This document shows, one piece after another, positions 36 through 35,403 of a DNA stretch of 64,000 bases (position 1 is the first letter of the stretch; each line of letters opens with the position of its first letter). Under the pieces are notes generated by a model. The model did no database searches. It was given only the letters and a program-made list of their open reading frames with translations, and had not been told where the DNA came from. A program made the translations under genes and the position numbers. Location: the sequence record ON529850.1. One strand, given 5' to 3'.

Positions 36-1133
36 ATGACCGCCAACCCTGATGTCATGGTCTTCATCGGCCGATTCCAGCCGGTCCATAACGGGCATCT
101 GGACGTCATCGGCCAGGCGCTGGAGAAGGCGCAGCGTCTGATCATCCTGGTCGGCTCCGCCAACCTGGCGCGCGACACCCGCAACCCCTTCACCTATGAA
201 GAGCGCGCGGCGCTGATCCGGTCCGCCATCGTGGAGAAGTTCGGCGAGGACGCCCTGCTGCGCGTCGTCGTCAATGCGGTCCCCGACAGCCCCTATGACC
301 TTCAGGAATGGATCGAAACGGTCCAGATGGCGGTCAAGATGAACACCTCTCCGTTCGTGCGTCCTTCGATCGCCCTGACCGGACACGACCGAGATGAGAC
401 GTCCTTCTACCTGAAACTGTTCCCGCAGTGGCCCTACTTGGGCTGCGGCGACACCACCGGCATCAATGCGTCGCACCTGCGCGCAGACTTCTTCGGCGGC
501 GGAGTCCAGTTCTACAGCAACTACTGGCGCGATACGGGTCCGATCTGGCCGCAGGCGGCGCCCAAGGCGACGATCGACTTCCTGCACGCTTTCCGCGATC
601 GTCCGGAATACGCCCGCCTGCTCGCCGAGGCGAAGGCGGAAGCCGCCTACAAGAAGAAGTATGGGCCGGGACCGCATACGACTCTGGACGCGGTGGTGAT
701 CCAGTCCGGTCACGTCCTGGTCGGTCGTCGCAAGGGCGAATATGGACAGGGCATGCTGGCTCTGCCAGGCGGCTTCCTGGAAGTCGAGCGCGGCGAAACC
801 CTGCTCGACGGCGCCGTGCGGGAGTGTTTCGAAGAAACCCGGCTGTATGACCACTTCGGCCCGGACAATCTGATCACCGACGAACGTCGGCGCATGCTGC
901 ACACCCATCTGCGTGGGCGTGACGTGTTCGGCGATCCCAACCGGTCGCGGCGCGGGCGCATCATCACCCACGCCCACCTCTTCAAGCTGCCCGACGACTA
1001 TAGCCTGCCGAACGTCGCCGAGTGGGACGATCTGGGGGACGTGCACTGGATGCCGATCTCCGACGTCCGCGCCGACGAATTCTTCGAGGACCATGCCTTC
1101 ATCATCGAGAAGATGATTCGGCAGTTCCTGTAA
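36..1133 (+). CDS. nadM: Bifunctional NMN adenylyltransferase / Nudix (ADP-ribose pyrophosphatase)
   Basis: N-terminal GRFQPVHNGH (HxGH) cytidylyltransferase motif; C-terminal Nudix box GETLLDGAVRECFEET; adjacent to NAMPT. Confidence 0.92.
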   Translation: MTANPDVMVFIGRFQPVHNGHLDVIGQALEKAQRLIILVGSANLARDTRNPFTYEERAALIRSAIVEKFGEDALLRVVVNAVPDSPYDLQEWIETVQMAVKMNTSPFVRPSIALTGHDRDETSFYLKLFPQWPYLGCGDTTGINASHLRADFFGGGVQFYSNYWRDTGPIWPQAAPKATIDFLHAFRDRPEYARLLAEAKAEAAYKKKYGPGPHTTLDAVVIQSGHVLVGRRKGEYGQGMLALPGGFLEVERGETLLDGAVRECFEETRLYDHFGPDNLITDERRRMLHTHLRGRDVFGDPNRSRRGRIITHAHLFKLPDDYSLPNVAEWDDLGDVHWMPISDVRADEFFEDHAFIIEKMIRQFL

Positions 1134-1165
1134 TCACGCAACAACTTCCTACGGGGGATACCTTC

Positions 1166-2596
1166 ATGACCATGCCGCACGACACCGACAACCTGCCGAA
1201 CTACCTGGCGCCGTTGCCCTACAACCTGATCGCCGACACCGACAGCTACAAGCTGGGCCACTGGCGTCTGTATCGGAAGGGCACGACCACCGTTTACAGC
1301 TATATCGAGAGCCGGGGCGGCCGCTACGGCGAGGTGATGTTCGCCGGCCTCCAGCAGCTGCTCTATGAAAAGCTGGGCCAGCCGATCACCCGCGAACAGG
1401 TCGAGGAAATGGCGGCGTTCGTGCCGGCCCACGGCCTGCCCTTCAACCGTGAAGGTTGGGAGATCATCCTGAACGAATACGGCGGTCGCCTGCCGCTGCT
1501 GATCAAGTCGGTCCCCGAGGGCCTGGTGGTCCCGACCAAGAACGCCCTGTTCTCGATCGAGAACCTGGACCCGCGTCTGCCGTGGCTGACCTCCTACCTG
1601 GAGACGATGATCCTGCGCGACCTGTGGACGGCCTGCACGATCGCGACGCGCATCTTCTTCATGACGCGTCGCATCAACACCCACTGGGGACAGTTCTCGG
1701 ACAATCCGATGAGCCCGTTCGCCCTGCTCGACTTCTCGTCGCGCGGCACCATGGGCTATGACCACTCCGAAATCGGCGGCATCGCCTATCTGTTCCACTT
1801 CATGGGCTCGGACAACGTCCCGGCGGTCCGTGCCGCCAACTACTACTATTTCGACAACATGAGCGGCTATTCCGTCATGGCGGGCGAGCATTCGATCTCC
1901 TGCTCCTTCGGCCGCGACAACGACGACGACTACATCCGCAACTCGCTGGAAGTGGTCGACCCCAAGACGCCCCTGTCGCTGGTCGGCGATTCCTGGGACA
2001 TCTTCAAGTTCGCGCAGAAGGTCGTCACCAACCACAAGGAGCTGATCATCAACAAGGAGATCAGCTTCGTCACCCGCCCGGATTCCGGCGACATTCCGAC
2101 GGTGCTGCCGCCGGTGTTCCAGACCCTGGCGGCGGGCTTCGGCACCGACCGTAACGCCAAGGGCAGGGACGTCATCCGCTACGGCGCCAAGGTGCTGCAA
2201 GGCGACGGGATGAACGAAGACACCCACATGCAGCCGTTCGAGCTGGCGGACGCGCTCGGCATCGCCCCGGACAGCGTGATCACCGCCGCCGGCGGTGGTC
2301 TGATGACGGCGGACCTGGATCGCGACGTCAATAAGTGGGCGATGAAGGCGTCCGAGATGATCATCGACGGCGAACGCGTCGACATCTACAAGGACCCGAT
2401 CACCGATCCGGGCAAGAAGTCCAAGCGTGGTCGCTTCGGCCTCGTCCGCGATGAGAACGGCGCGTTCCAGACGATCAACCGCGTCAATGACGCCGAAGAC
2501 CGCGCCGATCTGATCGAAGCGCGCTTCTACAAAGGCGACGTGATCAACGCTTCCACCCTGGCCCAGGTGCGCGAACGCGTCGCGGCCCAACTGTAA
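1166..2596 (+). CDS. nadV: Nicotinamide phosphoribosyltransferase (NAMPT)
   Basis: DTDSYKLGHW, LLDFSSRG, LVGDSWD, RPDSGD, KDPITDPGKKSKRG motifs typical of NAMPT; ATG 1166 chosen after GGGGGA RBS. Confidence 0.93.
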   Translation: MTMPHDTDNLPNYLAPLPYNLIADTDSYKLGHWRLYRKGTTTVYSYIESRGGRYGEVMFAGLQQLLYEKLGQPITREQVEEMAAFVPAHGLPFNREGWEIILNEYGGRLPLLIKSVPEGLVVPTKNALFSIENLDPRLPWLTSYLETMILRDLWTACTIATRIFFMTRRINTHWGQFSDNPMSPFALLDFSSRGTMGYDHSEIGGIAYLFHFMGSDNVPAVRAANYYYFDNMSGYSVMAGEHSISCSFGRDNDDDYIRNSLEVVDPKTPLSLVGDSWDIFKFAQKVVTNHKELIINKEISFVTRPDSGDIPTVLPPVFQTLAAGFGTDRNAKGRDVIRYGAKVLQGDGMNEDTHMQPFELADALGIAPDSVITAAGGGLMTADLDRDVNKWAMKASEMIIDGERVDIYKDPITDPGKKSKRGRFGLVRDENGAFQTINRVNDAEDRADLIEARFYKGDVINASTLAQVRERVAAQL

Positions 2597-29068: not shown

Positions 29069-29157
29069 TGGGGGTACGACCTGGATTCGAACCAGGATAA
29101 AGGCTTTCGCCTTACGGGTTATGAGCCCGCTGCCTATTCCAACCGAGCCACCGTACC
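29069..29157 (-). tRNA. tRNA with CAU anticodon (Met or Ile2) and a long variable arm
   Basis: GGTACGG/TCGTACC acceptor stem, GCGGG-CT-CAT-AA-CCCGT anticodon arm, AAGGC-GAAA-GCCTT variable arm, CCTGG-TTCGAAT-CCAGG T arm, encoded CCA. Confidence 0.9.
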
Positions 29158-29780: not shown

Positions 29781-30210
29781 AGAGTGGGGAACTTTCTGTT
29801 CCAAGGCCCGGCAAGCCGGGGTTCCCCATACCCGTGGGCGCCCTTAGGCGGCCAGGAGGACTCGTTCGCCAGCGGCGAAGTTGTCGTTGGAAGCTTCGAC
29901 AGTTGTCAAAGTTGGATCGTGAGCGGCCGAAGCCGCCATGCAGACCCTAGCACCCGTCATTCAATCCCGTCACCAACGTCAATCGATACTATTCGGCCCC
30001 CTAACAGGATGTCCACCCTGGCTTTCGGCGCACACAGGAAACCTGCATGCTTCGCCGGGAACTAGCCTCATCCCCTGACGCCGGTATGGAATAGGCCATG
30101 CCTGACGCGCCGGATGGGCACCCTGTTGGTGGAGCCGACGGGATTCGCACCCGTGTCTTGTCCGTCTGTTTCGTTCTCTCTGCTTTGGACCGGAGTCCGC
30201 TGCGCGACGA
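29780..30210 (-). ncRNA. ssrA: Two-piece (circularly permuted) tmRNA
   Basis: Acceptor piece ends ACGGG-TGCGAAT-CCCGT-CGGCTCC-ACCA (30127); coding piece starts GGGGCCG (30000) giving G3-U70; tag ORF 29844-29900 VEASNDNFAAGERVLLAA*; 3' end of coding piece approximate. Confidence 0.9.
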
Positions 30211-30299: not shown

Positions 30300-30386
30300 T
30301 GGAGGGGACAGTCGGGATCGAACCGACGATACGCTTTCGCGAGCCGGGGTTGCAATCCGGCGCCTTACCACTCGGTCCATGTCCCC
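30300..30386 (-). tRNA. tRNA-Cys(GCA) with extended variable arm
   Basis: GGGGACA/TGTCCCC acceptor, U73, GCA anticodon, CGC-GAAA-GCG variable hairpin, encoded CCA. Confidence 0.88.
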
Positions 30387-31390: not shown

Positions 31391-31391
31391 C

Positions 31392-31425
31392 AAAACCCCC
31401 GGCGGTTGATCCGCCGGGGGTTTTT
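31392..31425. terminator. Bidirectional terminator
   Basis: AAAACCCCCGGCGG-TTGAT-CCGCCGGGGGTTTTT. Confidence 0.9.
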
Positions 31426-31612
31426 ACGTCGAATTCCGTCTTGGCCGACGTCGCCTCAAGCGCTCCCTTCTGGGGACCCGCGCCATGGTTTGTCCGAGGG
31501 GCTAGGTGCTCGATCCTCCCCGGCTCACGATCGTTAACCCCGGCAGAACAGGGTAGACAAGCACGAACGCGATGAAATCGCCCCGATCGACAAGAGACTT
31601 GCTGACCAGATC
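31426..31612 (-). ncRNA. Candidate ncRNA of about 190 nt
   Basis: Between TTGACA (31641-31646) and the 31392 terminator; no ORF; CCCGATC/GATCGGG and other hairpins. Confidence 0.4.
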
Positions 31613-31647
31613 GGGATCATATTGACGGGATTCGTGTCGGTGTCAAG

Positions 31648-32113
31648 TGGGACCTCTGGTCCCCGTCACGCCTGGTGCTGATTTCTCGGCCGGCGTTCGC
31701 CTCAGATGAATCGGCCTGTCACTTCACCGCGAAGTTCCGTGTCATCATCACGGTGCTCAGCCGACCTGCCCCATGTGTGAGGCCGAGCATTTTCCAGACA
31801 GGACCCTTTCCGGGCCACGGGGGCAGTGAAACCAAATCCGCGCCGCCTCTGGCGACCGTCAAGCCTGCTTTGCGATCTCGGGGGGCTTTCCCCTCACCAT
31901 CCGACCAGCCGAGCGGATGTGCCCGTCAGACTTGGAGTGGGAAGTCCCCAAGGCTGAAATGCGTTGCCGGCGCTTGTCGCACTCCGACCTTCCAGACGCT
32001 CACCGACCCGACTTCGTCGCCTCGAAGCTGAGGGGCCGTACTTACTCCCGACGACCTGCTTCAACGGCGCGACACGCATCCCGCAGGTTTCGACGATCTT
32101 CGCCGTTCTGTAA
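31648..32113 (-). ncRNA. Candidate large structured ncRNA of about 460 nt
   Basis: TTGACA(32143-32148)-17-GTAAAT promoter; no credible ORF; many hairpins with GAAA-type loops. Confidence 0.5.
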
Positions 32114-32151
32114 GTCGCCATTTACGTCGGTATTTGTCAGCCTGTCAAACA

Positions 32152-32186
32152 AAAAAGCCCCGCGCCATAGGGGCGCGGGGCTCTTT
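32152..32186 (-). terminator. Terminator of the Y RNA-rsr operon
   Basis: GCCCCGCGCC-ATAGG-GGCGCGGGGC with A6 (U-tract on minus). Confidence 0.85.
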
Positions 32187-32204
32187 CGCTCGGGGAAACG
32201 TACG

Positions 32205-33575
32205 TCAGTCGGCGGTGACGCCGTCCAGCTGGATCGCCTCGCTTTCGGCGATGTAGCGCAACACGTTCTCGGAGAACCCGTCGATGTGGGTCCAGCCGTT
32301 GCCGTAGCCGACGCCGTTCTTGGCCGAGGCGACGTTGATCATGTAGGCGCGCGACGCCTTGGGCGCCGGCATGCCGCGATTTTCCGCCTGCGCCTGTTCG
32401 TCGGTGATGACGATCAGGCGATCCGCCTGGACGTTCTCGTTGATCGCCCGGATCGCCGAAGCCAGGGCCGTGCCACGCCACGGCTGCGACTTGCGGATCG
32501 CATCCACTCCCGCCATGCCCTTGCGGGCCGGCGTCTCGACCAGGGCGTTGGAGAAGGTGAAGACGCGCACGTCCTCGCCCGGCACGATCGACGCCAGGGT
32601 GGCACCGGCGTCCATCCGGGTCAGATCGGATTTGGCGGACAGACGGGCGTCCATCGAACCCGAGACGTCCACCAGCACCACGGTCGACCCCTTCAACGGC
32701 TGCGCCGCCTTGATCGATTCCACCAGGGCTTGATCCAGCGCCGGCTCGAAGGACGGCGCATAGCGAGCCGCCGCCGTGAAGCGGAACGGCAGCACGCGGT
32801 CGGCGCCCTTGCGCGCCCGGATCGCGGCGTTGACCAAGGCGCGGTCGACGCCCGCCTGCTCCATGTTGCGCAGGTTGCGCAGCAGGGCCAGGTATCCGAG
32901 CTTATTCTCACGCAGGAGCCGCTCGAAGGTTTCCTTCTTGTCGGCGCCGCCCGACAGGGCGACTTCCCAGGTGTCCGGCGCTTCCAGAGCGTTATCGACC
33001 AGGCGGCCGAGCAGCTCGCCCTGTTCCGCCGACTTCGGCTTGACGTGGGCCAGGAAGAGCACGTCACGCAGACGCACGTCCTTGGCGCGATCGTACTTGG
33101 CGATCTGATAGGGATCGAACTTCACGAAGGCGGCGGCCAGGCCCTTCTTGACCTGCGCCGACAGAGGCGCCTTGCGACGCGCATCGCGCGGCGGATTCAT
33201 CGCCCAGTAGAGCGCCAGGAACTCCGACAGTTCATCCGCACGCTGGATGACGCGCTCGATGGTGCTCGACACCAGGGCCGAGCCCGAGCCGCGCTTCGCC
33301 AGAACGACCAGCAGCAGCAGCGGCGCATGGCGGAGCTTGGCGACTTCACGCGCTTCGATCGCCAGGGCCGCCAGCGAATCCACGGGCACTTCCTGGGCCA
33401 GGGTCTGGATACGGTCGGCGATGGTGACGCCGTCTTCGTAGAATTCGCCCTCCCAGAGCATGCAGGAAAGCACCGACCGGCGCAGCGCCTGGATCGGCGT
33501 CATGCGCGCCGCGACGGCGCCCTCATGGGTGCGTTCGTTGAACGTCTTGCGGGTATTGGCGTTGATCGCGCCCAT
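32205..33575 (-). CDS. rsr: Ro60/TROVE-domain RNA-binding protein with C-terminal vWA
   Basis: THEGA, WEGEFYEDG, QRADEL.E, KFDPYQIAKY, PDTWEVALS, LGYLALLRNLRN, VLPFRF, VDVSGSM (MIDAS), ITDEQ; AAGGAGG RBS. Confidence 0.95.
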   Translation of the reverse strand: MGAINANTRKTFNERTHEGAVAARMTPIQALRRSVLSCMLWEGEFYEDGVTIADRIQTLAQEVPVDSLAALAIEAREVAKLRHAPLLLLVVLAKRGSGSALVSSTIERVIQRADELSEFLALYWAMNPPRDARRKAPLSAQVKKGLAAAFVKFDPYQIAKYDRAKDVRLRDVLFLAHVKPKSAEQGELLGRLVDNALEAPDTWEVALSGGADKKETFERLLRENKLGYLALLRNLRNMEQAGVDRALVNAAIRARKGADRVLPFRFTAAARYAPSFEPALDQALVESIKAAQPLKGSTVVLVDVSGSMDARLSAKSDLTRMDAGATLASIVPGEDVRVFTFSNALVETPARKGMAGVDAIRKSQPWRGTALASAIRAINENVQADRLIVITDEQAQAENRGMPAPKASRAYMINVASAKNGVGYGNGWTHIDGFSENVLRYIAESEAIQLDGVTAD

Positions 33576-33626
33576 GGGTGCCTCCTTCAGGACTGGTCAA
33601 ATAGGGCGCGCCGGACCAGTCGAGGC

Positions 33627-33768
33627 GGGGTTGGGGAGGATCAATCGGCGACGCCTCATGGCGCTCTATCCAACTGAGCTACCGCCGGAAAACCGGCGAG
33701 CGGAACTCGAATCCGCGACCTCCCGATTAGCAGTCGAAGAATGCGTCTCCTGCGCCATCCCCAACCCC
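33627..33768 (-). ncRNA. Y RNA-like element Y1 (YrlA-type, permuted tRNA module)
   Basis: GGGGTTGGGGA/TCCCCAACCCC stem; T arm GCGGA-TTCGAGT-TCCGC, acceptor closed by TTTT, D arm TAGCTCAGTTGGATAGAGC; shared TGGCG-AG motif. Confidence 0.85.
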
Positions 33769-33778
33769 CTCGGTCTGA

Positions 33779-33915
33779 TCCGGCGCGCTGGTAGGCGGGC
33801 GGGGGATTAAGCGAAGACGGGGCGGGTTCGAACCGCAGGACCGGCACCAAGAGCCGGGCTTCAACCAAGAAGTATCCGTCGTCTACGCCACCCGCCCGCC
33901 AACCAGCGCGCCGGA
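33779..33915 (-). ncRNA. Y RNA-like element Y2 (T arm only)
   Basis: Long terminal stem TCCGGCGCGCTGGT/ACCAGCGCGCCGGA; TGGCGTAG-N8-TACTTC; T arm GCGG-TTCGAAC-CCGC; no D arm. Confidence 0.75.
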
Positions 33916-33919
33916 GACC

Positions 33920-34069
33920 AACAGGGCGACGGGGGATCAATCGACCCCACCGACGTTTGACCGTGCTACCCCTACACTAAAAGCGCGCAGTGCGCTTCCC
34001 AGGAGTTGAACCTGGCCTTGCCGCTCCCATAGCGATGAAAGTGACGTCTACGCCACCCGTCGCCCTGTT
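33920..34069 (-). ncRNA. Y RNA-like element Y3 (YrlA-type)
   Basis: AACAGGGCGACGGG/CCCGTCGCCCTGTT stem; TGGCGTAG; T arm CCAGG-TTCAACT-CCTGG; closed acceptor; D arm TAGTGTAGGGGTAGCAC. Confidence 0.85.
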
Positions 34070-34077
34070 GTTCAACC

Positions 34078-34249
34078 GAAAGACGTAAGGTAGGCCGTCA
34101 GGGGTTTGAGCGACAAGGCATTGCGTTGTCTAATGCTCTACCAGCTGAGCTACCGCCGGCCGAAGCCAACGAGCGGGAGTTGAACCCGCGACCACCAGAT
34201 GAGAAGTAGTCCTTGCCTACGCCACCTGACGGCCTGCCTTACGTCTTTC
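34078..34249 (-). ncRNA. Y RNA-like element Y4 (YrlA-type)
   Basis: 25-bp terminal stem GAAAGACGTAAGG...; TGGCGTAG-N8-TACTTC; T arm GCGGG-TTCAACT-CCCGC; acceptor capped by UUCG; D arm TAGCTCAGCTGGTAGAGC. Confidence 0.88.
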
Positions 34250-34370
34250 CGTCGATCCCTGGCGGGATCATCCCGAAGTCCTATATGCCGCCGAGGTTCA
34301 GATGATTCCGGTGTTGAGTGCCCAAGAGGTGGACATTTTACCGAAGTAGCCGAAACCTACGCCATCGACG
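34250..34370 (-). ncRNA. Y RNA-like element Y5 (no tRNA module)
   Basis: CGTCGAT/ATCGACG stem; TGGCGTAG-N8-TACTTC. Confidence 0.7.
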
Positions 34371-34381
34371 ACGAATAGGGC

Positions 34382-34465
34382 GTCCGGGATTAGGCGGAAC
34401 CGAGAGCGGGGGCTAGGCCCCCAGACGTACCAAAAACGAAGAACTCGGTCCCTGTCGCCACGGAC
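34382..34465 (-). ncRNA. Y RNA-like element Y6 (short, no tRNA module)
   Basis: GTCCG/CGGAC stem; TGGCGACAG-N8-TTCTTC; begins at the predicted TSS. Confidence 0.6.
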
Positions 34466-34471
34466 AATGCG

Positions 34472-34500
34472 CTTATGCCCGAGGCGGACTCTGCTGTCAA
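34472..34500 (-). promoter_or_regulatory. Promoter of the Y RNA array-rsr operon
   Basis: TTGACA(34500-34495)-17-CATAAG. Confidence 0.65.
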
Positions 34501-34534: not shown

Positions 34535-34564
34535 GAAAAAAGCCCCCGGCGAACCGGGGGCTTT
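34535..34564 (-). terminator. Terminator downstream of the repressor-like gene
   Basis: AAAAAAGCCCCCGG-CGAA-CCGGGGGCTTT (UUCG loop on minus). Confidence 0.85.
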
Positions 34565-34587: not shown

Positions 34588-35403
34588 TTAGAGCGCCCCC
34601 ATGGCGCCGACCACGCGGCCGAGGATTTTGATCGACGTCGGATCGACCTCCTCGTAGTGGCGCAGGTCGGCGTCGTAGATGCGGATCATCTTGGAGCGCG
34701 GCGGCGTGGTCAACTGCGCCACCACCAGGGCGCCGTCGCGGGCGAAGGCGAACGCCGCCGCCGAAGCCGTCGGCATCTGATCCTTGGCGACGAAGACCAT
34801 ATCGCCGGGCTTGGCCCGATCGCTGAAGTCGTCGACCATGATCAGCACCATGTCCGAACCCGGAACGGCGAAGCGATCTTCCATCCAGGCTTCGTCCAGC
34901 GACCAGGTGCCGACCGTTTGGAACGAGACGCCGCGCGCGGCCTTCTTGAGGGCGACTTCTTCGATCGTGCCGCGCGAGCCGATGCCGAAGGTCAGCCATT
35001 CGGGCGTGCATTTCAGCGCGGTCGCCAGGCTCTTGATCTTCTCCAGATCAGGCACGACGTCGCCGGTCTCATACATGCAGTAGCCGGAGCGGGACAGCGT
35101 CTTCCAGGTGCCGCCGTTCTTGTTGTAGAAGGTGACCTGGGACGACACGTCATCCTGAGACAGGTTCAGCTCCAGCCGGCGGGCCACCAGGCGATCGCCC
35201 AAGGTGGTGGGGTTGTCGACGGTCACGGTGGTCGAGCCCTTGCGGTGCATCGGCGAGCGGGTCTTGACGTCTTGAACTTCCGGGACGGGGTCCGGCTTGA
35301 CGCGGGTCTTGGCGGCGGGCGCCGCAGCCTTGCGGGCCTGAGTCTTGGCGACCGCCGGTTTGGCGGCCTTGGTCGAGCGTTCCTTAACGAGGGCTTGCCC
35401 CAT
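34588..35403 (-). CDS. CI-like XRE-family HTH regulator with S24-like C-terminal domain
   Basis: LGDRLVARRLELNLSQDDVS...YETGDVVPDLEKIKSLATALKCTPEWLTFG; C-terminal KPGDMVFV beta-domain. Confidence 0.8.
   Translation of the reverse strand: MGQALVKERSTKAAKPAVAKTQARKAAAPAAKTRVKPDPVPEVQDVKTRSPMHRKGSTTVTVDNPTTLGDRLVARRLELNLSQDDVSSQVTFYNKNGGTWKTLSRSGYCMYETGDVVPDLEKIKSLATALKCTPEWLTFGIGSRGTIEEVALKKAARGVSFQTVGTWSLDEAWMEDRFAVPGSDMVLIMVDDFSDRAKPGDMVFVAKDQMPTASAAAFAFARDGALVVAQLTTPPRSKMIRIYDADLRHYEEVDPTSIKILGRVVGAMGAL

What the first reader, a model, noticed from the sequence alone, without database searches (positions are those of the whole stretch)
32152..34500. Ro60 (rsr) operon with six tandem, architecturally diverse Y-RNA-like elements, three of them permuted tRNA mimics
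Seen: one promoter (TSS about 34465) leads into six self-contained stem-closed units (84-172 nt), then rsr and a terminator. All share a 5' motif UGGCG(U/C/A)(C)AG-N8-...UUC (33736, 33869, about 34036, 34203, 34343, 34438 on plus), and most share a 3' motif like GAUUGAUCC or GCUUAAUCC, next to unrelated terminal stems. Y1, Y3 and Y4 carry T arm, loop-closed acceptor and D arm with different D/T sequences; Y2 has only a T arm; Y5 and Y6 have none. Established: Ro60 binds a conserved Y RNA helix (bacterial motif about GNCGAAG), YrlA RNAs mimic tRNA, Ro60-Y RNA can tether PNPase, and bacterial loci such as Salmonella typically have about two Y RNAs. Inference: this is a modular cassette in which one Ro60 is loaded with interchangeable adaptors or decoys. 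The anticodon-less tRNA mimics could soak up or evade tRNA-targeting defences, or direct different effectors. This is the best candidate here for an undescribed system.
Basis: partly seen in the sequence, partly recalled or inferred. Interest (0 to 1): 0.9.

Follow-up and report, generated by a model that had tools for sequence, protein, structure and literature searches.

The report
Six-gene Y RNA array before phage rsr
A jumbo Brevundimonas phage carries six small structured RNA genes in a row in front of its Ro60-like gene (rsr); this enlarges the known Ro60/Y RNA system, and arrays of 4-8 units are common in related phages and bacteria but are missed by Rfam's YrlA threshold in the 20 loci tested and appear in no paper I could search.

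Summary
The window is Brevundimonas phage vB_BpoS-Gurke. On the minus strand, a conserved promoter at 34500-34472 leads into six stem-closed RNA units (34465-33613), then rsr (33575-32205, TROVE plus vWA) and a terminator.

All six units share one module, found nowhere else in the 64 kb. Its helices covary strongly across 136 relatives. Y1, Y3 and Y4 carry the T arm, loop-closed acceptor and D arm of known YrlA RNAs. Y2 has a T arm plus one hairpin. Y5 and Y6 are hairpins.

This is the described Rsr/Y RNA system: several Y RNAs made as one transcript, one of them tRNA-like, also reported in phages. The permuted tRNA mimic is the ordinary YrlA layout.

Arrays of this size are routine in this Rsr clade. 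CcrPW and CcrColossus have 8 units, Xanthomonas phage Sopo has 5, and 80 bacterial loci mostly have 4-6.

New points: the units score below Rfam's YrlA threshold, the shared module is well defined, and unit types keep their order between distant phages. The decoy idea has no support. Verdict: new variant of a known kind, moderate interest.

The parts
34539..34564 (-). Intrinsic terminator of the upstream HTH-regulator gene. It isolates the rsr operon from read-through.
   Evidence: An 11-bp stem followed by a T run.
34472..34500 (-). Sigma-70-type promoter. The -35 hexamer TTGACA lies at 34500-34495, then a 17-nt spacer, then the -10-like hexamer CATAAG at 34477-34472. The expected transcription start is about 34465.
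   Evidence: The block TGTTGACA is invariant at the same distance from the first unit in Gurke, Kabachok, CcrPW and a metagenomic viral contig. The simple promoter scan did not report it, because the -10 hexamer lacks a final T.
34382..34465 (-). Unit Y6, hairpin type, 84 nt. The shared module encloses a GC hairpin with a 3-nt loop. It has no tRNA-like arm.
   Evidence: R1 scores it 67.7 bits, but it was a training member. Positional orthologues are CcrPW U1 and Kabachok K1. It is identical in Kikimora.
34287..34372 (-). Unit Y5, hairpin type, 86 nt, with an 8-bp terminal stem. The shared module encloses a 5-bp hairpin with a pyrimidine-rich 7-nt loop. One base of the module departs from the family norm in Gurke and is canonical in Kikimora.
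   Evidence: R1 scores it 33.4 bits (E = 5e-8), and it was not in the training set. Five of the eight Gurke/Kikimora differences within units fall here.
34247..34286 (-). Spacer with a small 6-bp hairpin between Y5 and Y4.
   Evidence: Read from the sequence and from the minimum-free-energy fold. It has no model match.
34081..34246 (-). Unit Y4, tRNA-like, 166 nt (core 34229-34098). A long outer stem and the shared module enclose a T arm, an 8-bp loop-closed acceptor-like stem and a D arm.
   Evidence: R1 scores it 29.7 bits. Rfam YrlA scores it 31.4 bits, E = 4e-4. The RNAalifold consensus of 20 units supports the arms. Its best matches are Sopo S1 and Kabachok K2.
33919..34070 (-). Unit Y3, tRNA-like, 152 nt (core 34060-33929). 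The shared module encloses a small hairpin, a T arm, a 7-bp loop-closed acceptor-like stem and a D arm.
   Evidence: R1 scores it 29.3 bits. It is aligned with the tRNA-like units. In the orthologue Kabachok K3 the acceptor stem has a completely different sequence but still pairs.
33780..33914 (-). Unit Y2, T-arm-only type, 135 nt (core 33895-33799). A 23-bp outer stem and the shared module enclose a 5-bp hairpin followed by a T arm. It has no acceptor stem and no D arm.
   Evidence: R1 scores it 70.3 bits, but it was a training member. Orthologues are CcrPW U5, Kabachok K4 and Sopo S4.
33613..33781 (-). Unit Y1, tRNA-like, 169 nt (core 33762-33633). The shared module encloses a T arm, a 7-bp loop-closed acceptor-like stem and a D arm. 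GenBank (33691-33765) and ARAGORN call part of it tRNA-Ser; this is a mis-call.
   Evidence: Rfam YrlA scores it 38.8 bits (E = 2.7e-6), while Rfam tRNA gives only 20.8 bits against a threshold of 29. R1 scores it 33.6 bits. ARAGORN's call is and the GenBank annotation. Orthologues are CcrPW U6 and Sopo S5.
33581..33587 (-). Shine-Dalgarno sequence of rsr (AAGGAGG).
   Evidence: Read directly from the sequence, 5 nt before the ATG at 33575.
32205..33575 (-). The rsr gene, a Ro60 (TROVE plus vWA) homologue of 456 aa with a DxSxS MIDAS motif.
   Evidence: Pfam TROVE E = 7.8e-13 and VWA_2 E = 2.7e-6. PHROG 850, 'RNA-binding protein', E = 2e-62. The PDB entries 9KOP/9L5Y (Thermus phage phiLo Ro60) match at E = 1e-20 over residues 13-396.
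32147..32174 (-). Intrinsic terminator of the operon.
   Evidence: A GC stem at 32174-32157 followed by a T run.

Best explanation
The locus is a Y RNA array and rsr operon. One promoter drives a transcript of about 2.3 kb that holds six Y-RNA-like genes followed by the mRNA for an Ro60 homologue (Rsr).

Each unit is closed by pairing of its own 5' and 3' ends. Next to that stem sits one conserved bulged-helix module, in this order:
- the terminal stem;
- a bulged U;
- two G:C pairs;
- two further pairs, with a 6-nt bulge on the 3' strand;
- a 2-4-nt bulge on the 5' strand, ending in AG in all six window units;
- a 7-bp helix;
- six nearly invariant unpaired bases.

The 5' strand of this module corresponds to the published Ro60-binding motif GNCGAAN0-1G. 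I infer that the units are cut out of the precursor and that each is bound and stabilised by Rsr through this module.

The distal parts differ between units: hairpins in Y6 and Y5, a T arm plus a hairpin in Y2, and YrlA-type tRNA mimics in Y4, Y3 and Y1. I infer that these act as alternative effector-binding modules. One Rsr ring could then be coupled to different partners, with PNPase and tRNA-recognising enzymes as the known precedents.

The cassette is a lineage-wide feature of one Rsr clade, found in Caulobacterales, Hyphomonadaceae, Micropepsaceae and Acidobacteriaceae and in their phages. The phage most likely acquired it from a bacterium related to its host.

In the jumbo phages the operon sits inside the nucleotide-metabolism cluster. 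A speculative role is to direct host PNPase to structured host RNA. PNPase releases nucleoside diphosphates, which are the substrates of the neighbouring class I ribonucleotide reductase.

Shown: the sequence features, the covariation, the distribution and the link with rsr. Inferred: processing, Rsr binding, effector recruitment and the role in infection.
For: Six units share one module that occurs nowhere else in the 64 kb.

On 132 distinct units the module's helices are 92.5% paired, against 64.5% in shuffles and 36-48% when partners are slid. There are 623 cells with changes on both sides against 208 in shuffles, and the covariation score is 0.79 against 0.25.

The two G:C pairs of the corrected register are 100% and 99.2% paired, with 9 and 14 double changes. 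RNAalifold predicted the same pairs on an independent MAFFT alignment.

The T arm, the 7-bp closed acceptor stem and the D arm are supported in 20 units: 29 of 31 predicted pairs show compensatory changes. Rfam YrlA hits Y1 and Y4.

The link with rsr is strong:
- All 127 viral hits are on the rsr strand, nearly all of them just upstream of rsr; every bacterial hit that was listed (the top 300 of 363) is on the rsr strand.
- A 5'-motif HMM gives 536 same-strand hits and 1 opposite-strand hit.
- Of 80 viral loci picked by motif alone, 42 have rsr adjacent on the same strand, 8 are cut off by the end of the locus, 27 have no module and are chance matches, and 3 have a module without rsr.

The promoter -35 element is invariant in four divergent loci. 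Terminators bracket the operon.

Unit types keep their order between Gurke, CcrPW, Kabachok and Sopo. Between Gurke and Kikimora the units differ at 1.0% of positions and rsr at 2.9%.

The module is lost in Rsr relatives below about 40-45% identity, which suggests that the RNA and the protein co-evolve.

Precedents: polycistronic Y RNAs upstream of rsr, tRNA-like YrlA, and a YrlB with only a T arm (PMC4201824); the phage phiLo Ro60 binds two upstream Y-like RNAs and host PNPase (PMC12135203).
Against: There are no expression, processing or binding data for this phage or for any member of this clade.

No unit reaches Rfam's YrlA gathering score (best 38.8 bits against 69).

The Pfam TROVE match covers only 50 residues. 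NCBIfam has no hit. The D. radiodurans Rsr structure is not recovered by sequence search at E <= 0.01.

Which conserved bases contact Rsr is unknown. The nearly invariant six bases after the 7-bp helix have no known role.

The link between PNPase products and the reductase rests only on gene neighbourhood in the jumbo phages. It is absent in Sopo and in the bacterial loci.

The covariation counts were made on an alignment fitted to the model.
Confidence: 0.75

Rival explanations
1. Anti-defence decoys. The tRNA-like units exist to soak up or divert host tRNA-targeting defence nucleases during infection, and Rsr serves only as a chaperone.
For: The locus is in a phage that also carries tRNAs, a tmRNA and a peptidyl-tRNA hydrolase. 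Three units mimic the tRNA elbow and acceptor stem.
Against: The same arrays, often larger, lie in bacterial chromosomes next to ordinary genes such as an aquaporin, a response regulator and transposases. The primary role therefore cannot be specific to phages. The mimics lack an anticodon arm, which anticodon nucleases recognise; only Y1-type units can form a weak hairpin there, and it has no covariation support. Half of the units are not tRNA-like at all. No defence or anti-defence gene is linked to the locus.
Confidence: 0.07
2. Cis-acting leader. The repeated modules are Rsr-binding sites in the 5' untranslated region. They let Rsr regulate its own translation or mRNA stability, and no stable trans-acting small RNAs are made.
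For: All units lie in the rsr 5' leader. Y1 ends 37 nt before the start codon. An alternative 8-bp hairpin (33621-33614 with 33598-33591) competes with the outer stem of Y1 and ends 3 nt before the Shine-Dalgarno sequence.
Against: In five viral loci the units lie downstream of rsr, as they do in Salmonella. Conserved, ordered and elaborate tRNA-like modules are not needed for autoregulation. In M. smegmatis and D. radiodurans, units of this kind are processed from a precursor into stable RNAs. Autoregulation could coexist with the main explanation.
Confidence: 0.1
3. Decayed or rearranged tRNA genes. The region is a degenerate tRNA cluster, with adjacent tRNA halves misread as permuted mimics, and has no functional link to Rsr.
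For: ARAGORN and GenBank call a tRNA-Ser inside Y1. Rfam tRNA gives weak hits in some relatives. Chen et al. warn that dimeric tRNAs can mimic YrlA.
Against: Within each unit the T arm comes before the D arm, the acceptor stem is closed by a loop, and both lie inside a conserved non-tRNA module. Compensatory changes maintain these helices across more than 130 loci. The units are strictly co-oriented with rsr and adjacent to it. The tRNA score of Y1 is below threshold (20.8 against 29).
Confidence: 0.02

Closest known systems
YrlA/YrlB Y RNAs with Rsr in Salmonella Typhimurium and Mycobacterium smegmatis (Chen et al. 2013, 2014; Rfam RF02553)
   Same: The RNAs are encoded next to rsr on the same strand. 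In M. smegmatis they lie upstream and are processed from one precursor. The 5' and 3' ends pair, with a G-rich motif on the 5' strand (GNCGAAN0-1G). The tRNA-like domain has the order T arm, closed acceptor stem, D arm. A second RNA carries only a T arm or is a hairpin with a pyrimidine-rich loop.
   Different: Here there are six units rather than two. The shared module has a defined 3' strand and six nearly invariant bases that are not part of the YrlA model. All units score below Rfam's gathering threshold. There is no rtcBA/RtcR context. The host genome is a jumbo phage.
Deinococcus radiodurans Yrn1/Yrn2 with Rsr and PNPase (the RYPER complex)
   Same: Several small RNAs are encoded upstream of rsr and made as one precursor. 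Both strands of the Ro-binding helix are recognisable. The Y RNA tethers Rsr to an exoribonuclease, which is the mechanistic model adopted here.
   Different: The arrangement of tRNA-like features differs. The D. radiodurans Rsr structure is not recovered by sequence search from the Gurke protein. PNPase involvement is untested here.
Thermus phage phiLo Ro60 with Yrl1 and Yrl2 (PMC12135203; PDB 9KOP, 9L5Y)
   Same: It is a phage-encoded Ro60 homologue with Y-like RNAs directly upstream of the gene. It is the closest solved structure to the Gurke protein (E = 1e-20). It binds its RNAs and host PNPase in vitro.
   Different: It has two hairpin-type RNAs with a CGAA motif and no tRNA-like module. 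It has no array of 5-8 units.
Vertebrate Y RNA families (up to four Y RNAs per species sharing one Ro60-binding bulged stem)
   Same: The logic is the same: one Ro60 ring and several paralogous RNAs with a common bulged-helix binding site and different distal loops that bind different proteins.
   Different: They are separate polymerase III genes, not an operon with Ro60. They have no tRNA-like module.

Membership tests
Ro60/Rsr (TROVE) proteins | A TROVE (HEAT-repeat ring) domain followed by a vWA domain with a MIDAS motif | tested here: met
   Pfam TROVE scores 48.8 bits (cut-off 23) but covers only residues 197-246. VWA_2 scores 28.4 bits (cut-off 27). vWA_Ro60 scores 24.5 bits, below its cut-off of 27.7. 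A DxSxS motif is present in the translation. The solved phage Ro60 homologue 9KOP matches over residues 13-396 at E = 1e-20.
Ro60/Rsr (TROVE) proteins | Binds Y RNAs | not testable with these tools
   There are no binding data. The only support is co-occurrence of the RNA module with the gene.
Bacterial Y RNAs (YrlA-like, Rfam RF02553) | Encoded within a few kb of rsr on the same strand | tested here: met
   All six units lie 38-890 nt upstream of rsr on the same strand. The same holds in about 130 related loci.
Bacterial Y RNAs (YrlA-like, Rfam RF02553) | A stem formed by the 5' and 3' ends that carries the GNCGAAN0-1G motif on the 5' strand | tested here: met
   All six units have a G-G-C-G run followed by one or two bases and then A-G at the matching place; this agrees with the published motif at 6 of 7 positions. 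Column shares in 136 units are G 93%, G 88%, C/U 64/36%, G 100%, one variable base, A 96%, G 94%. The published motif is quoted.
Bacterial Y RNAs (YrlA-like, Rfam RF02553) | A tRNA-like domain with a T arm, an acceptor-like stem and a D arm | tested here: met
   Met for Y1, Y3 and Y4. Not met for Y2, which has a T arm only, or for Y5 and Y6. Those three resemble the published second class (YrlB, Yrn2).
Bacterial Y RNAs (YrlA-like, Rfam RF02553) | Reaches the Rfam gathering score of 69 bits | tested here: not met
   The best score in the window is 38.8 bits (Y1), and Y4 scores 31.4 bits. None of 20 related loci has a YrlA hit at the gathering threshold. By Rfam's criterion the units are not members of RF02553. 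I file them as a divergent relative.
Bacterial Y RNAs (YrlA-like, Rfam RF02553) | Accumulates as a discrete small RNA that depends on Rsr, and carries tRNA-type modifications | not testable with these tools
   No expression data were available.
tRNA genes | A cloverleaf with the order acceptor, D arm, anticodon arm, T arm, scoring above the Rfam tRNA threshold | tested here: not met
   Y1 scores 20.8 bits against a threshold of 29. The arm order is permuted and the acceptor stem is closed by a loop. ARAGORN's tRNA-Ser call is a mis-call.

The most novel reading that the evidence does not exclude
The array is an ordered, conserved panel of adaptor RNAs: hairpin types first, then several distinct tRNA mimics. 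Each would couple the same Rsr ring to a different partner, giving a multi-adaptor RNA surveillance or degradation machine larger than any Ro60 system described. In jumbo phages it might feed host structured RNA through PNPase into the neighbouring ribonucleotide reductase pathway. The six nearly invariant bases shared by all unit types would be a common docking site that has not been recognised before.
Probability: 0.15. Interest if true: 0.8.

Novelty: new variant of a known kind. Interest (0 to 1): 0.5.

Why it matters
Ro60/Y RNA particles are known in only a handful of bacteria, each with about two Y RNAs, and the role of the tRNA-like domain is still unknown.

This work identifies a large clade that standard annotation misses. 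It comprises about 130 loci in Alphaproteobacteria, Acidobacteriaceae and their phages, including cultured phages and bacterial isolates. In this clade one rsr gene is preceded by 2-9 Y-RNA-like genes.

The units share a sharply defined module supported by covariation, and their types keep a conserved order. That gives many natural variants of the Rsr-binding site and of the tRNA mimic. It also offers tractable material for asking what the different modules bind.

It corrects the public annotation as well. In the Gurke record a 'tRNA-Ser' is really a Y RNA and rsr is listed as 'hypothetical protein'.

Tried and rejected
- Rfam at gathering threshold finds nothing in the array. Relaxed thresholds give YrlA for Y1 and Y4 only, plus a 19.9-bit tmRNA match across Y5/Y4. 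I attribute that match to the T arm and acceptor stem and reject it.
- My first pairing model for the module paired the four G-G-Y-G bases with the four bases next to the 7-bp helix. Its second pair is only 72% paired with no double changes. I replaced it with the register supported by covariation.
- An alternative, longer closure of Y5 (to about 34252) is rejected in favour of 34372-34287. The model, the minimum-free-energy fold and the Kikimora substitutions all fit the shorter unit.
- An anticodon-arm-like hairpin in Y1, which is the source of the tRNA-Ser call, has no covariation support. Its 5' strand is part of the invariant block. I leave it as a possibility.
- Of 30 viral loci that matched the 5' pattern but lacked rsr, 27 had no module. 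That is the number of chance matches expected for a 15-base pattern in a collection of this size.
- The 757-nt gap downstream of rsr is not unusually structured (z = -1.2).
- Model R1 finds nothing in Ralstonia phage RsoM2USA, Rhizobium phage RHph_TM39 or crAss001.
- The supplementary tables of Chen et al. 2014 and two reviews (PMC10870794, PMC6542706) could not be read. I therefore could not check how many YrlA genes were already listed for CcrColossus.
- I did not predict the Rsr structure. The sequence match to a solved phage Ro60 was enough.


Full report
**Source and context.** The window is 100% identical to Brevundimonas phage vB_BpoS-Gurke (ON529850.1), a 321-kb jumbo phage of the subfamily Dolichocephalovirinae. 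Window coordinate plus 124000 gives the record coordinate. The finding lies on the minus strand, between an HTH-regulator gene (34588-35403) and a cluster of tRNAs and a tmRNA. It sits inside a block of nucleotide-metabolism genes: ribonucleotide reductase alpha and beta, dUTPase, thymidylate synthase and a dNMP kinase.

**The gene.** ORF 32205-33575 (minus strand, 456 aa) is a Ro60/Rsr homologue.
- It matches Pfam TROVE (E = 7.8e-13, a partial match) and VWA_2, and falls just below threshold for vWA_Ro60.
- It matches PHROG 850, 'RNA-binding protein' (E = 2e-62).
- It has a DxSxS MIDAS motif.
- Its closest solved relative is the Ro60 homologue of Thermus phage phiLo (9KOP/9L5Y, E = 1e-20 over residues 13-396). 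That protein binds two Y-like RNAs encoded just upstream of its gene, and also host PNPase (PMC12135203).
- The protein is divergent. NCBIfam gives no hit, and the D. radiodurans Rsr structure is not recovered by sequence search at E <= 0.01.
- GenBank lists the gene as 'hypothetical protein'.

The whole window has 12 matches against 1.43 expected. I built covariance model R1 from eight short units of Gurke, Kabachok, CcrPW and Xanthomonas phage Sopo. With filters off it finds all six units and nothing else nearby. With default filters it finds nothing else in the 64 kb. The four units outside the training set score 29-34 bits (E = 5e-8 to 7e-7). Unit bounds, with core modules in brackets:

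| Unit | Bounds | Core |
|---|---|---|
| Y6 | 34465-34382 | same |
| Y5 | 34372-34287 | 34369-34290 |
| Y4 | 34246-34081 | 34229-34098 |
| Y3 | 34070-33919 | 34060-33929 |
| Y2 | 33914-33780 | 33895-33799 |
| Y1 | 33781-33613 | 33762-33633 |

The 886-nt leader is far more stable than its shuffles (z = -9.5).

**Anatomy of the shared module.** I collected 136 units from the window, three cultured relatives and about 50 viral contigs. Column shares on the 5' strand are as follows:
- five variable stem bases;
- then U 96%, G 93%, G 88%, C 64% or U 36%, G 100%;
- one variable base, then A 96% and G 94%;
- seven variable paired bases and one variable base;
- then U 100%, A 92%, C 100%, U 94%, U 99%, C 99%.

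On the 3' strand the seven partner bases are followed by C 93% and G 97%. Then comes a six-base stretch whose last two bases are U 91% and U 95%. Then come C 89% and C 93%, and finally the stem partner.

The helices covary. Cells are 92.5% paired, against 64.5% in shuffles and 36-48% with slid partners. There are 623 double-change cells against 208. The covariation score is 0.79 against 0.25 (this alignment was fitted to the model).

My first register for the short middle helix was wrong. The two G after the bulged U pair with the two C before the 3' stem strand: 100% and 99.2% paired, with 9 and 14 double changes. RNAalifold predicted these pairs on its own on an unfitted MAFFT alignment. The module is therefore, in order:
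- the terminal stem;
- a bulged U;
- two G:C pairs stacked on two further pairs, with a 6-nt bulge on the 3' strand;
- a 2-4-nt bulge on the 5' strand, ending in A-G in all six window units;
- a 7-bp helix;
- six nearly invariant unpaired bases.

All six window units fit this. Y5 departs at one base that is canonical in Kikimora. The 5' strand agrees at 6 of 7 positions with the motif GNCGAAN0-1G, which Chen et al. assign to the Rsr-binding site.

**Variable modules.**
- Y1, Y3 and Y4 contain a T arm, a 7-8-bp acceptor-like stem closed by a loop, and a D arm, in that order.
- RNAalifold on 20 such units from phages and bacteria recovers these three helices plus the shared module. Of 31 predicted pairs, 29 show compensatory changes.
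- Rfam YrlA hits Y1 (38.8 bits) and Y4 (31.4 bits).
- This arm order is the ordinary YrlA layout, not a new permutation.
- Y2 has a 5-bp hairpin followed by a T arm only, like M. smegmatis YrlB.
- Y5 is a hairpin with a pyrimidine-rich 7-nt loop, and Y6 is a GC hairpin. [quoted passage not shown]
- ARAGORN and GenBank call a tRNA-Ser at 33691-33765. It lies inside Y1 and scores only 20.8 bits on Rfam tRNA against a threshold of 29. It is a mis-call.

**Operon structure.**
- The block TGTTGACA (34502-34495), which contains the -35 hexamer at 34500-34495, is invariant in Gurke, Kabachok, CcrPW and a viral contig, at a fixed distance from the first unit.
- With a 17-nt spacer and a -10-like hexamer at 34477-34472, the expected start is about 34465, the first base of Y6.
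- Terminators lie at 34564-34539, ending the upstream gene, and at 32174-32157, after rsr.
- A Shine-Dalgarno sequence lies at 33587-33581.
- Between Gurke and Kikimora the units differ at 8 of 790 positions, five of them in Y5. The rsr gene differs at 40 of 1371 positions.

**Distribution, which decides the question of novelty.**
- The same motif occurs 8 times upstream of rsr in CcrPW and in CcrColossus, and 6 times in Kikimora.
- Kabachok-type phages have 5 units. The 43-kb Xanthomonas phage Sopo also has 5.
- Unit types keep their order. Y6 matches CcrPW U1 and Kabachok K1. Y4 matches U3/U6, K2 and Sopo S1. Y3 matches K3. Y2 matches U5, K4 and S4. Y1 matches U6 and S5. The array is therefore old and diversified, not a recent duplication.
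- In 53 further viral contigs that encode relatives of this Rsr, R1 finds 127 units. All are on the rsr strand and almost all lie just upstream.
- In 80 bacterial loci it finds 363 units. The hosts are Acidobacteriaceae such as Terracidiphilus and Occallatibacter, plus Caulobacterales, Hyphomonadaceae, Micropepsaceae and Enterovirga.
- A conservative 5'-motif HMM gave 1 opposite-strand hit against 536 same-strand hits. It misses Y6 and most Kabachok units, so its counts are lower bounds. It gives 2-3 units for most viral contigs (maximum 9) and 4-6 for most bacterial loci; 21 of 80 bacterial loci have 6 or 7.
- Arrays typically begin with one or two hairpin-type units followed by several units that carry a T arm (this is a rough classifier).
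- Two bacterial loci I examined lie in ordinary chromosomal context with no conserved neighbouring gene.
- I also picked 80 viral loci by an exact 5' pattern alone. Of these, 42 have rsr adjacent on the same strand (37 with the units upstream, 5 downstream). Eight are cut off by the end of the locus. Twenty-seven have no module and are chance matches. Three have a module without an adjacent rsr.
- The module is absent from more distant Rsr loci (Ralstonia RsoM2USA, Rhizobium RHph_TM39, crAss001). RHph_TM39 still has two or three YrlA-like hits upstream of its TROVE gene.
- None of 20 related loci tested has a YrlA hit at Rfam's gathering score, and a few of their units are called tRNA instead.

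**What is already known.** Chen et al. 2014 (PMC4201824) reported 355 YrlA candidates in 254 bacteria and 22 phages. They found that all three species studied have at least two Y RNAs, processed from one precursor, one of them tRNA-like. [quoted passage not shown] CcrColossus is cited as a phage with Ro60 and Y RNA. The YrlA tRNA-like domain has been solved, and its partner is unknown. I found no paper that describes arrays of 5-9 units or this module. I could not read the 2014 supplementary tables or two reviews.

**Mechanism.** Shown: a conserved promoter, six co-oriented structured units with a common covarying module, an rsr gene and terminators; a tight link between the module and rsr; conservation of unit order. 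Inferred: the units are released from the precursor and each binds Rsr through the shared bulged helix, by analogy with known Y RNAs. The distal modules would recruit different partners. [quoted passage not shown] A speculative point follows from position. In the jumbo phages the operon lies beside the ribonucleotide reductase genes, and PNPase releases nucleoside diphosphates. An Rsr/Y RNA/PNPase particle could therefore feed host structured RNA into phage DNA synthesis. That neighbourhood is not shared by Sopo or by the bacterial loci.

**Rivals.** The decoy idea is weakened by the bacterial chromosomal distribution, by the missing anticodon arms and by the three units that are not tRNA-like. 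A purely cis-regulatory leader is possible but unlikely, given the loci with units downstream of rsr and the elaborate conserved modules; it could coexist with the main explanation. Decayed tRNA genes are excluded by the layout and the covariation.

**Verdict.** The interpretation as an rsr operon with Y-RNA-like units is right. The claims that the system is undescribed, that the array size is unusual and that the units act as anti-defence decoys are not supported. What the evidence adds is a divergent subfamily of Y RNAs with a sharply defined module. It is missed at Rfam's YrlA threshold in the 20 loci tested and forms ordered arrays of 2-9 units in about 130 loci. I rate it a new variant of a known kind, interest 0.5.

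Noticed in passing
window 29844-30189 (-): A permuted (two-piece type) tmRNA, Rfam RF04321, 57.7 bits. It lies between tRNA-Cys and two tRNA-Met genes and is not annotated in the GenBank record.
   Followed up: partly
window 33691-33765 (-): The GenBank feature tRNA-Ser (GURKE_03100; the same call is present in Kikimora) is a mis-call inside Y RNA unit Y1. In CcrColossus a 'tRNA-Gln' is annotated inside the corresponding array.
   Followed up: yes
window 31623-31715 (within the unannotated gap 31391-32156 downstream of rsr): A segment of 60-90 nt is 76-92% identical to short segments in more than 20 Caulobacter and Brevundimonas phage genomes, sometimes at several places in one genome. Some of these are phiCbK-like phages that gave no match to the rsr region. 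It may be a shared promoter-like element. The gap as a whole is not unusually structured (z = -1.2).
   Followed up: partly
window 33591-33621 (-): The 3' strand of Y1's outer stem can instead form a perfect 8-bp hairpin with 33598-33591, which ends 3 nt before the rsr Shine-Dalgarno sequence. This could link processing or folding of Y1 to rsr translation (read).
   Followed up: no
window 36-2596 (+): Two adjacent genes are annotated as an NMN adenylyltransferase/Nudix hydrolase and a nicotinamide phosphoribosyltransferase. From my own knowledge, this NAD-salvage pair resembles phage NAD-reconstitution counter-defence pathways.
   Followed up: no
window 29069-29157 and 30300-30386 (-): The tRNA-Met (89 nt) and the tRNA-Cys (87 nt) are unusually long for these tRNA types and have modest Rfam scores of 40-43 bits.
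   Followed up: no
L160:6010-6123 (-) and L201:1601-1810 (-): These loci hold genuine Y-type modules (31-48 bits) with no Rsr homologue detectable in the fetched locus. In L160 the next genes downstream encode an unassigned 128-aa protein, a YqeY-like protein and then an RRM-domain protein.
   Followed up: partly
L041:3512-3714; also L150, L188, L191, L203, L220: In a few viral contigs the units lie just downstream of rsr instead of upstream, as in Salmonella.
   Followed up: partly
L265:1980-2514 (Rhizobium phage RHph_TM39): Two YrlA-like hits and one tRNA-model hit lie in the 1.2-kb gap upstream of the phage's TROVE gene, inside a tRNA cluster. My module model does not match them. Multi-unit arrays therefore also exist with a different Rsr-binding module.
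   Followed up: partly
L266:4693-4836 (Bacteroides phage crAss001): A 144-nt match to the tRNA model (46.6 bits) lies in the unannotated 900-nt gap directly after the TROVE gene Gp96. It could be a tRNA-like partner RNA.
   Followed up: no
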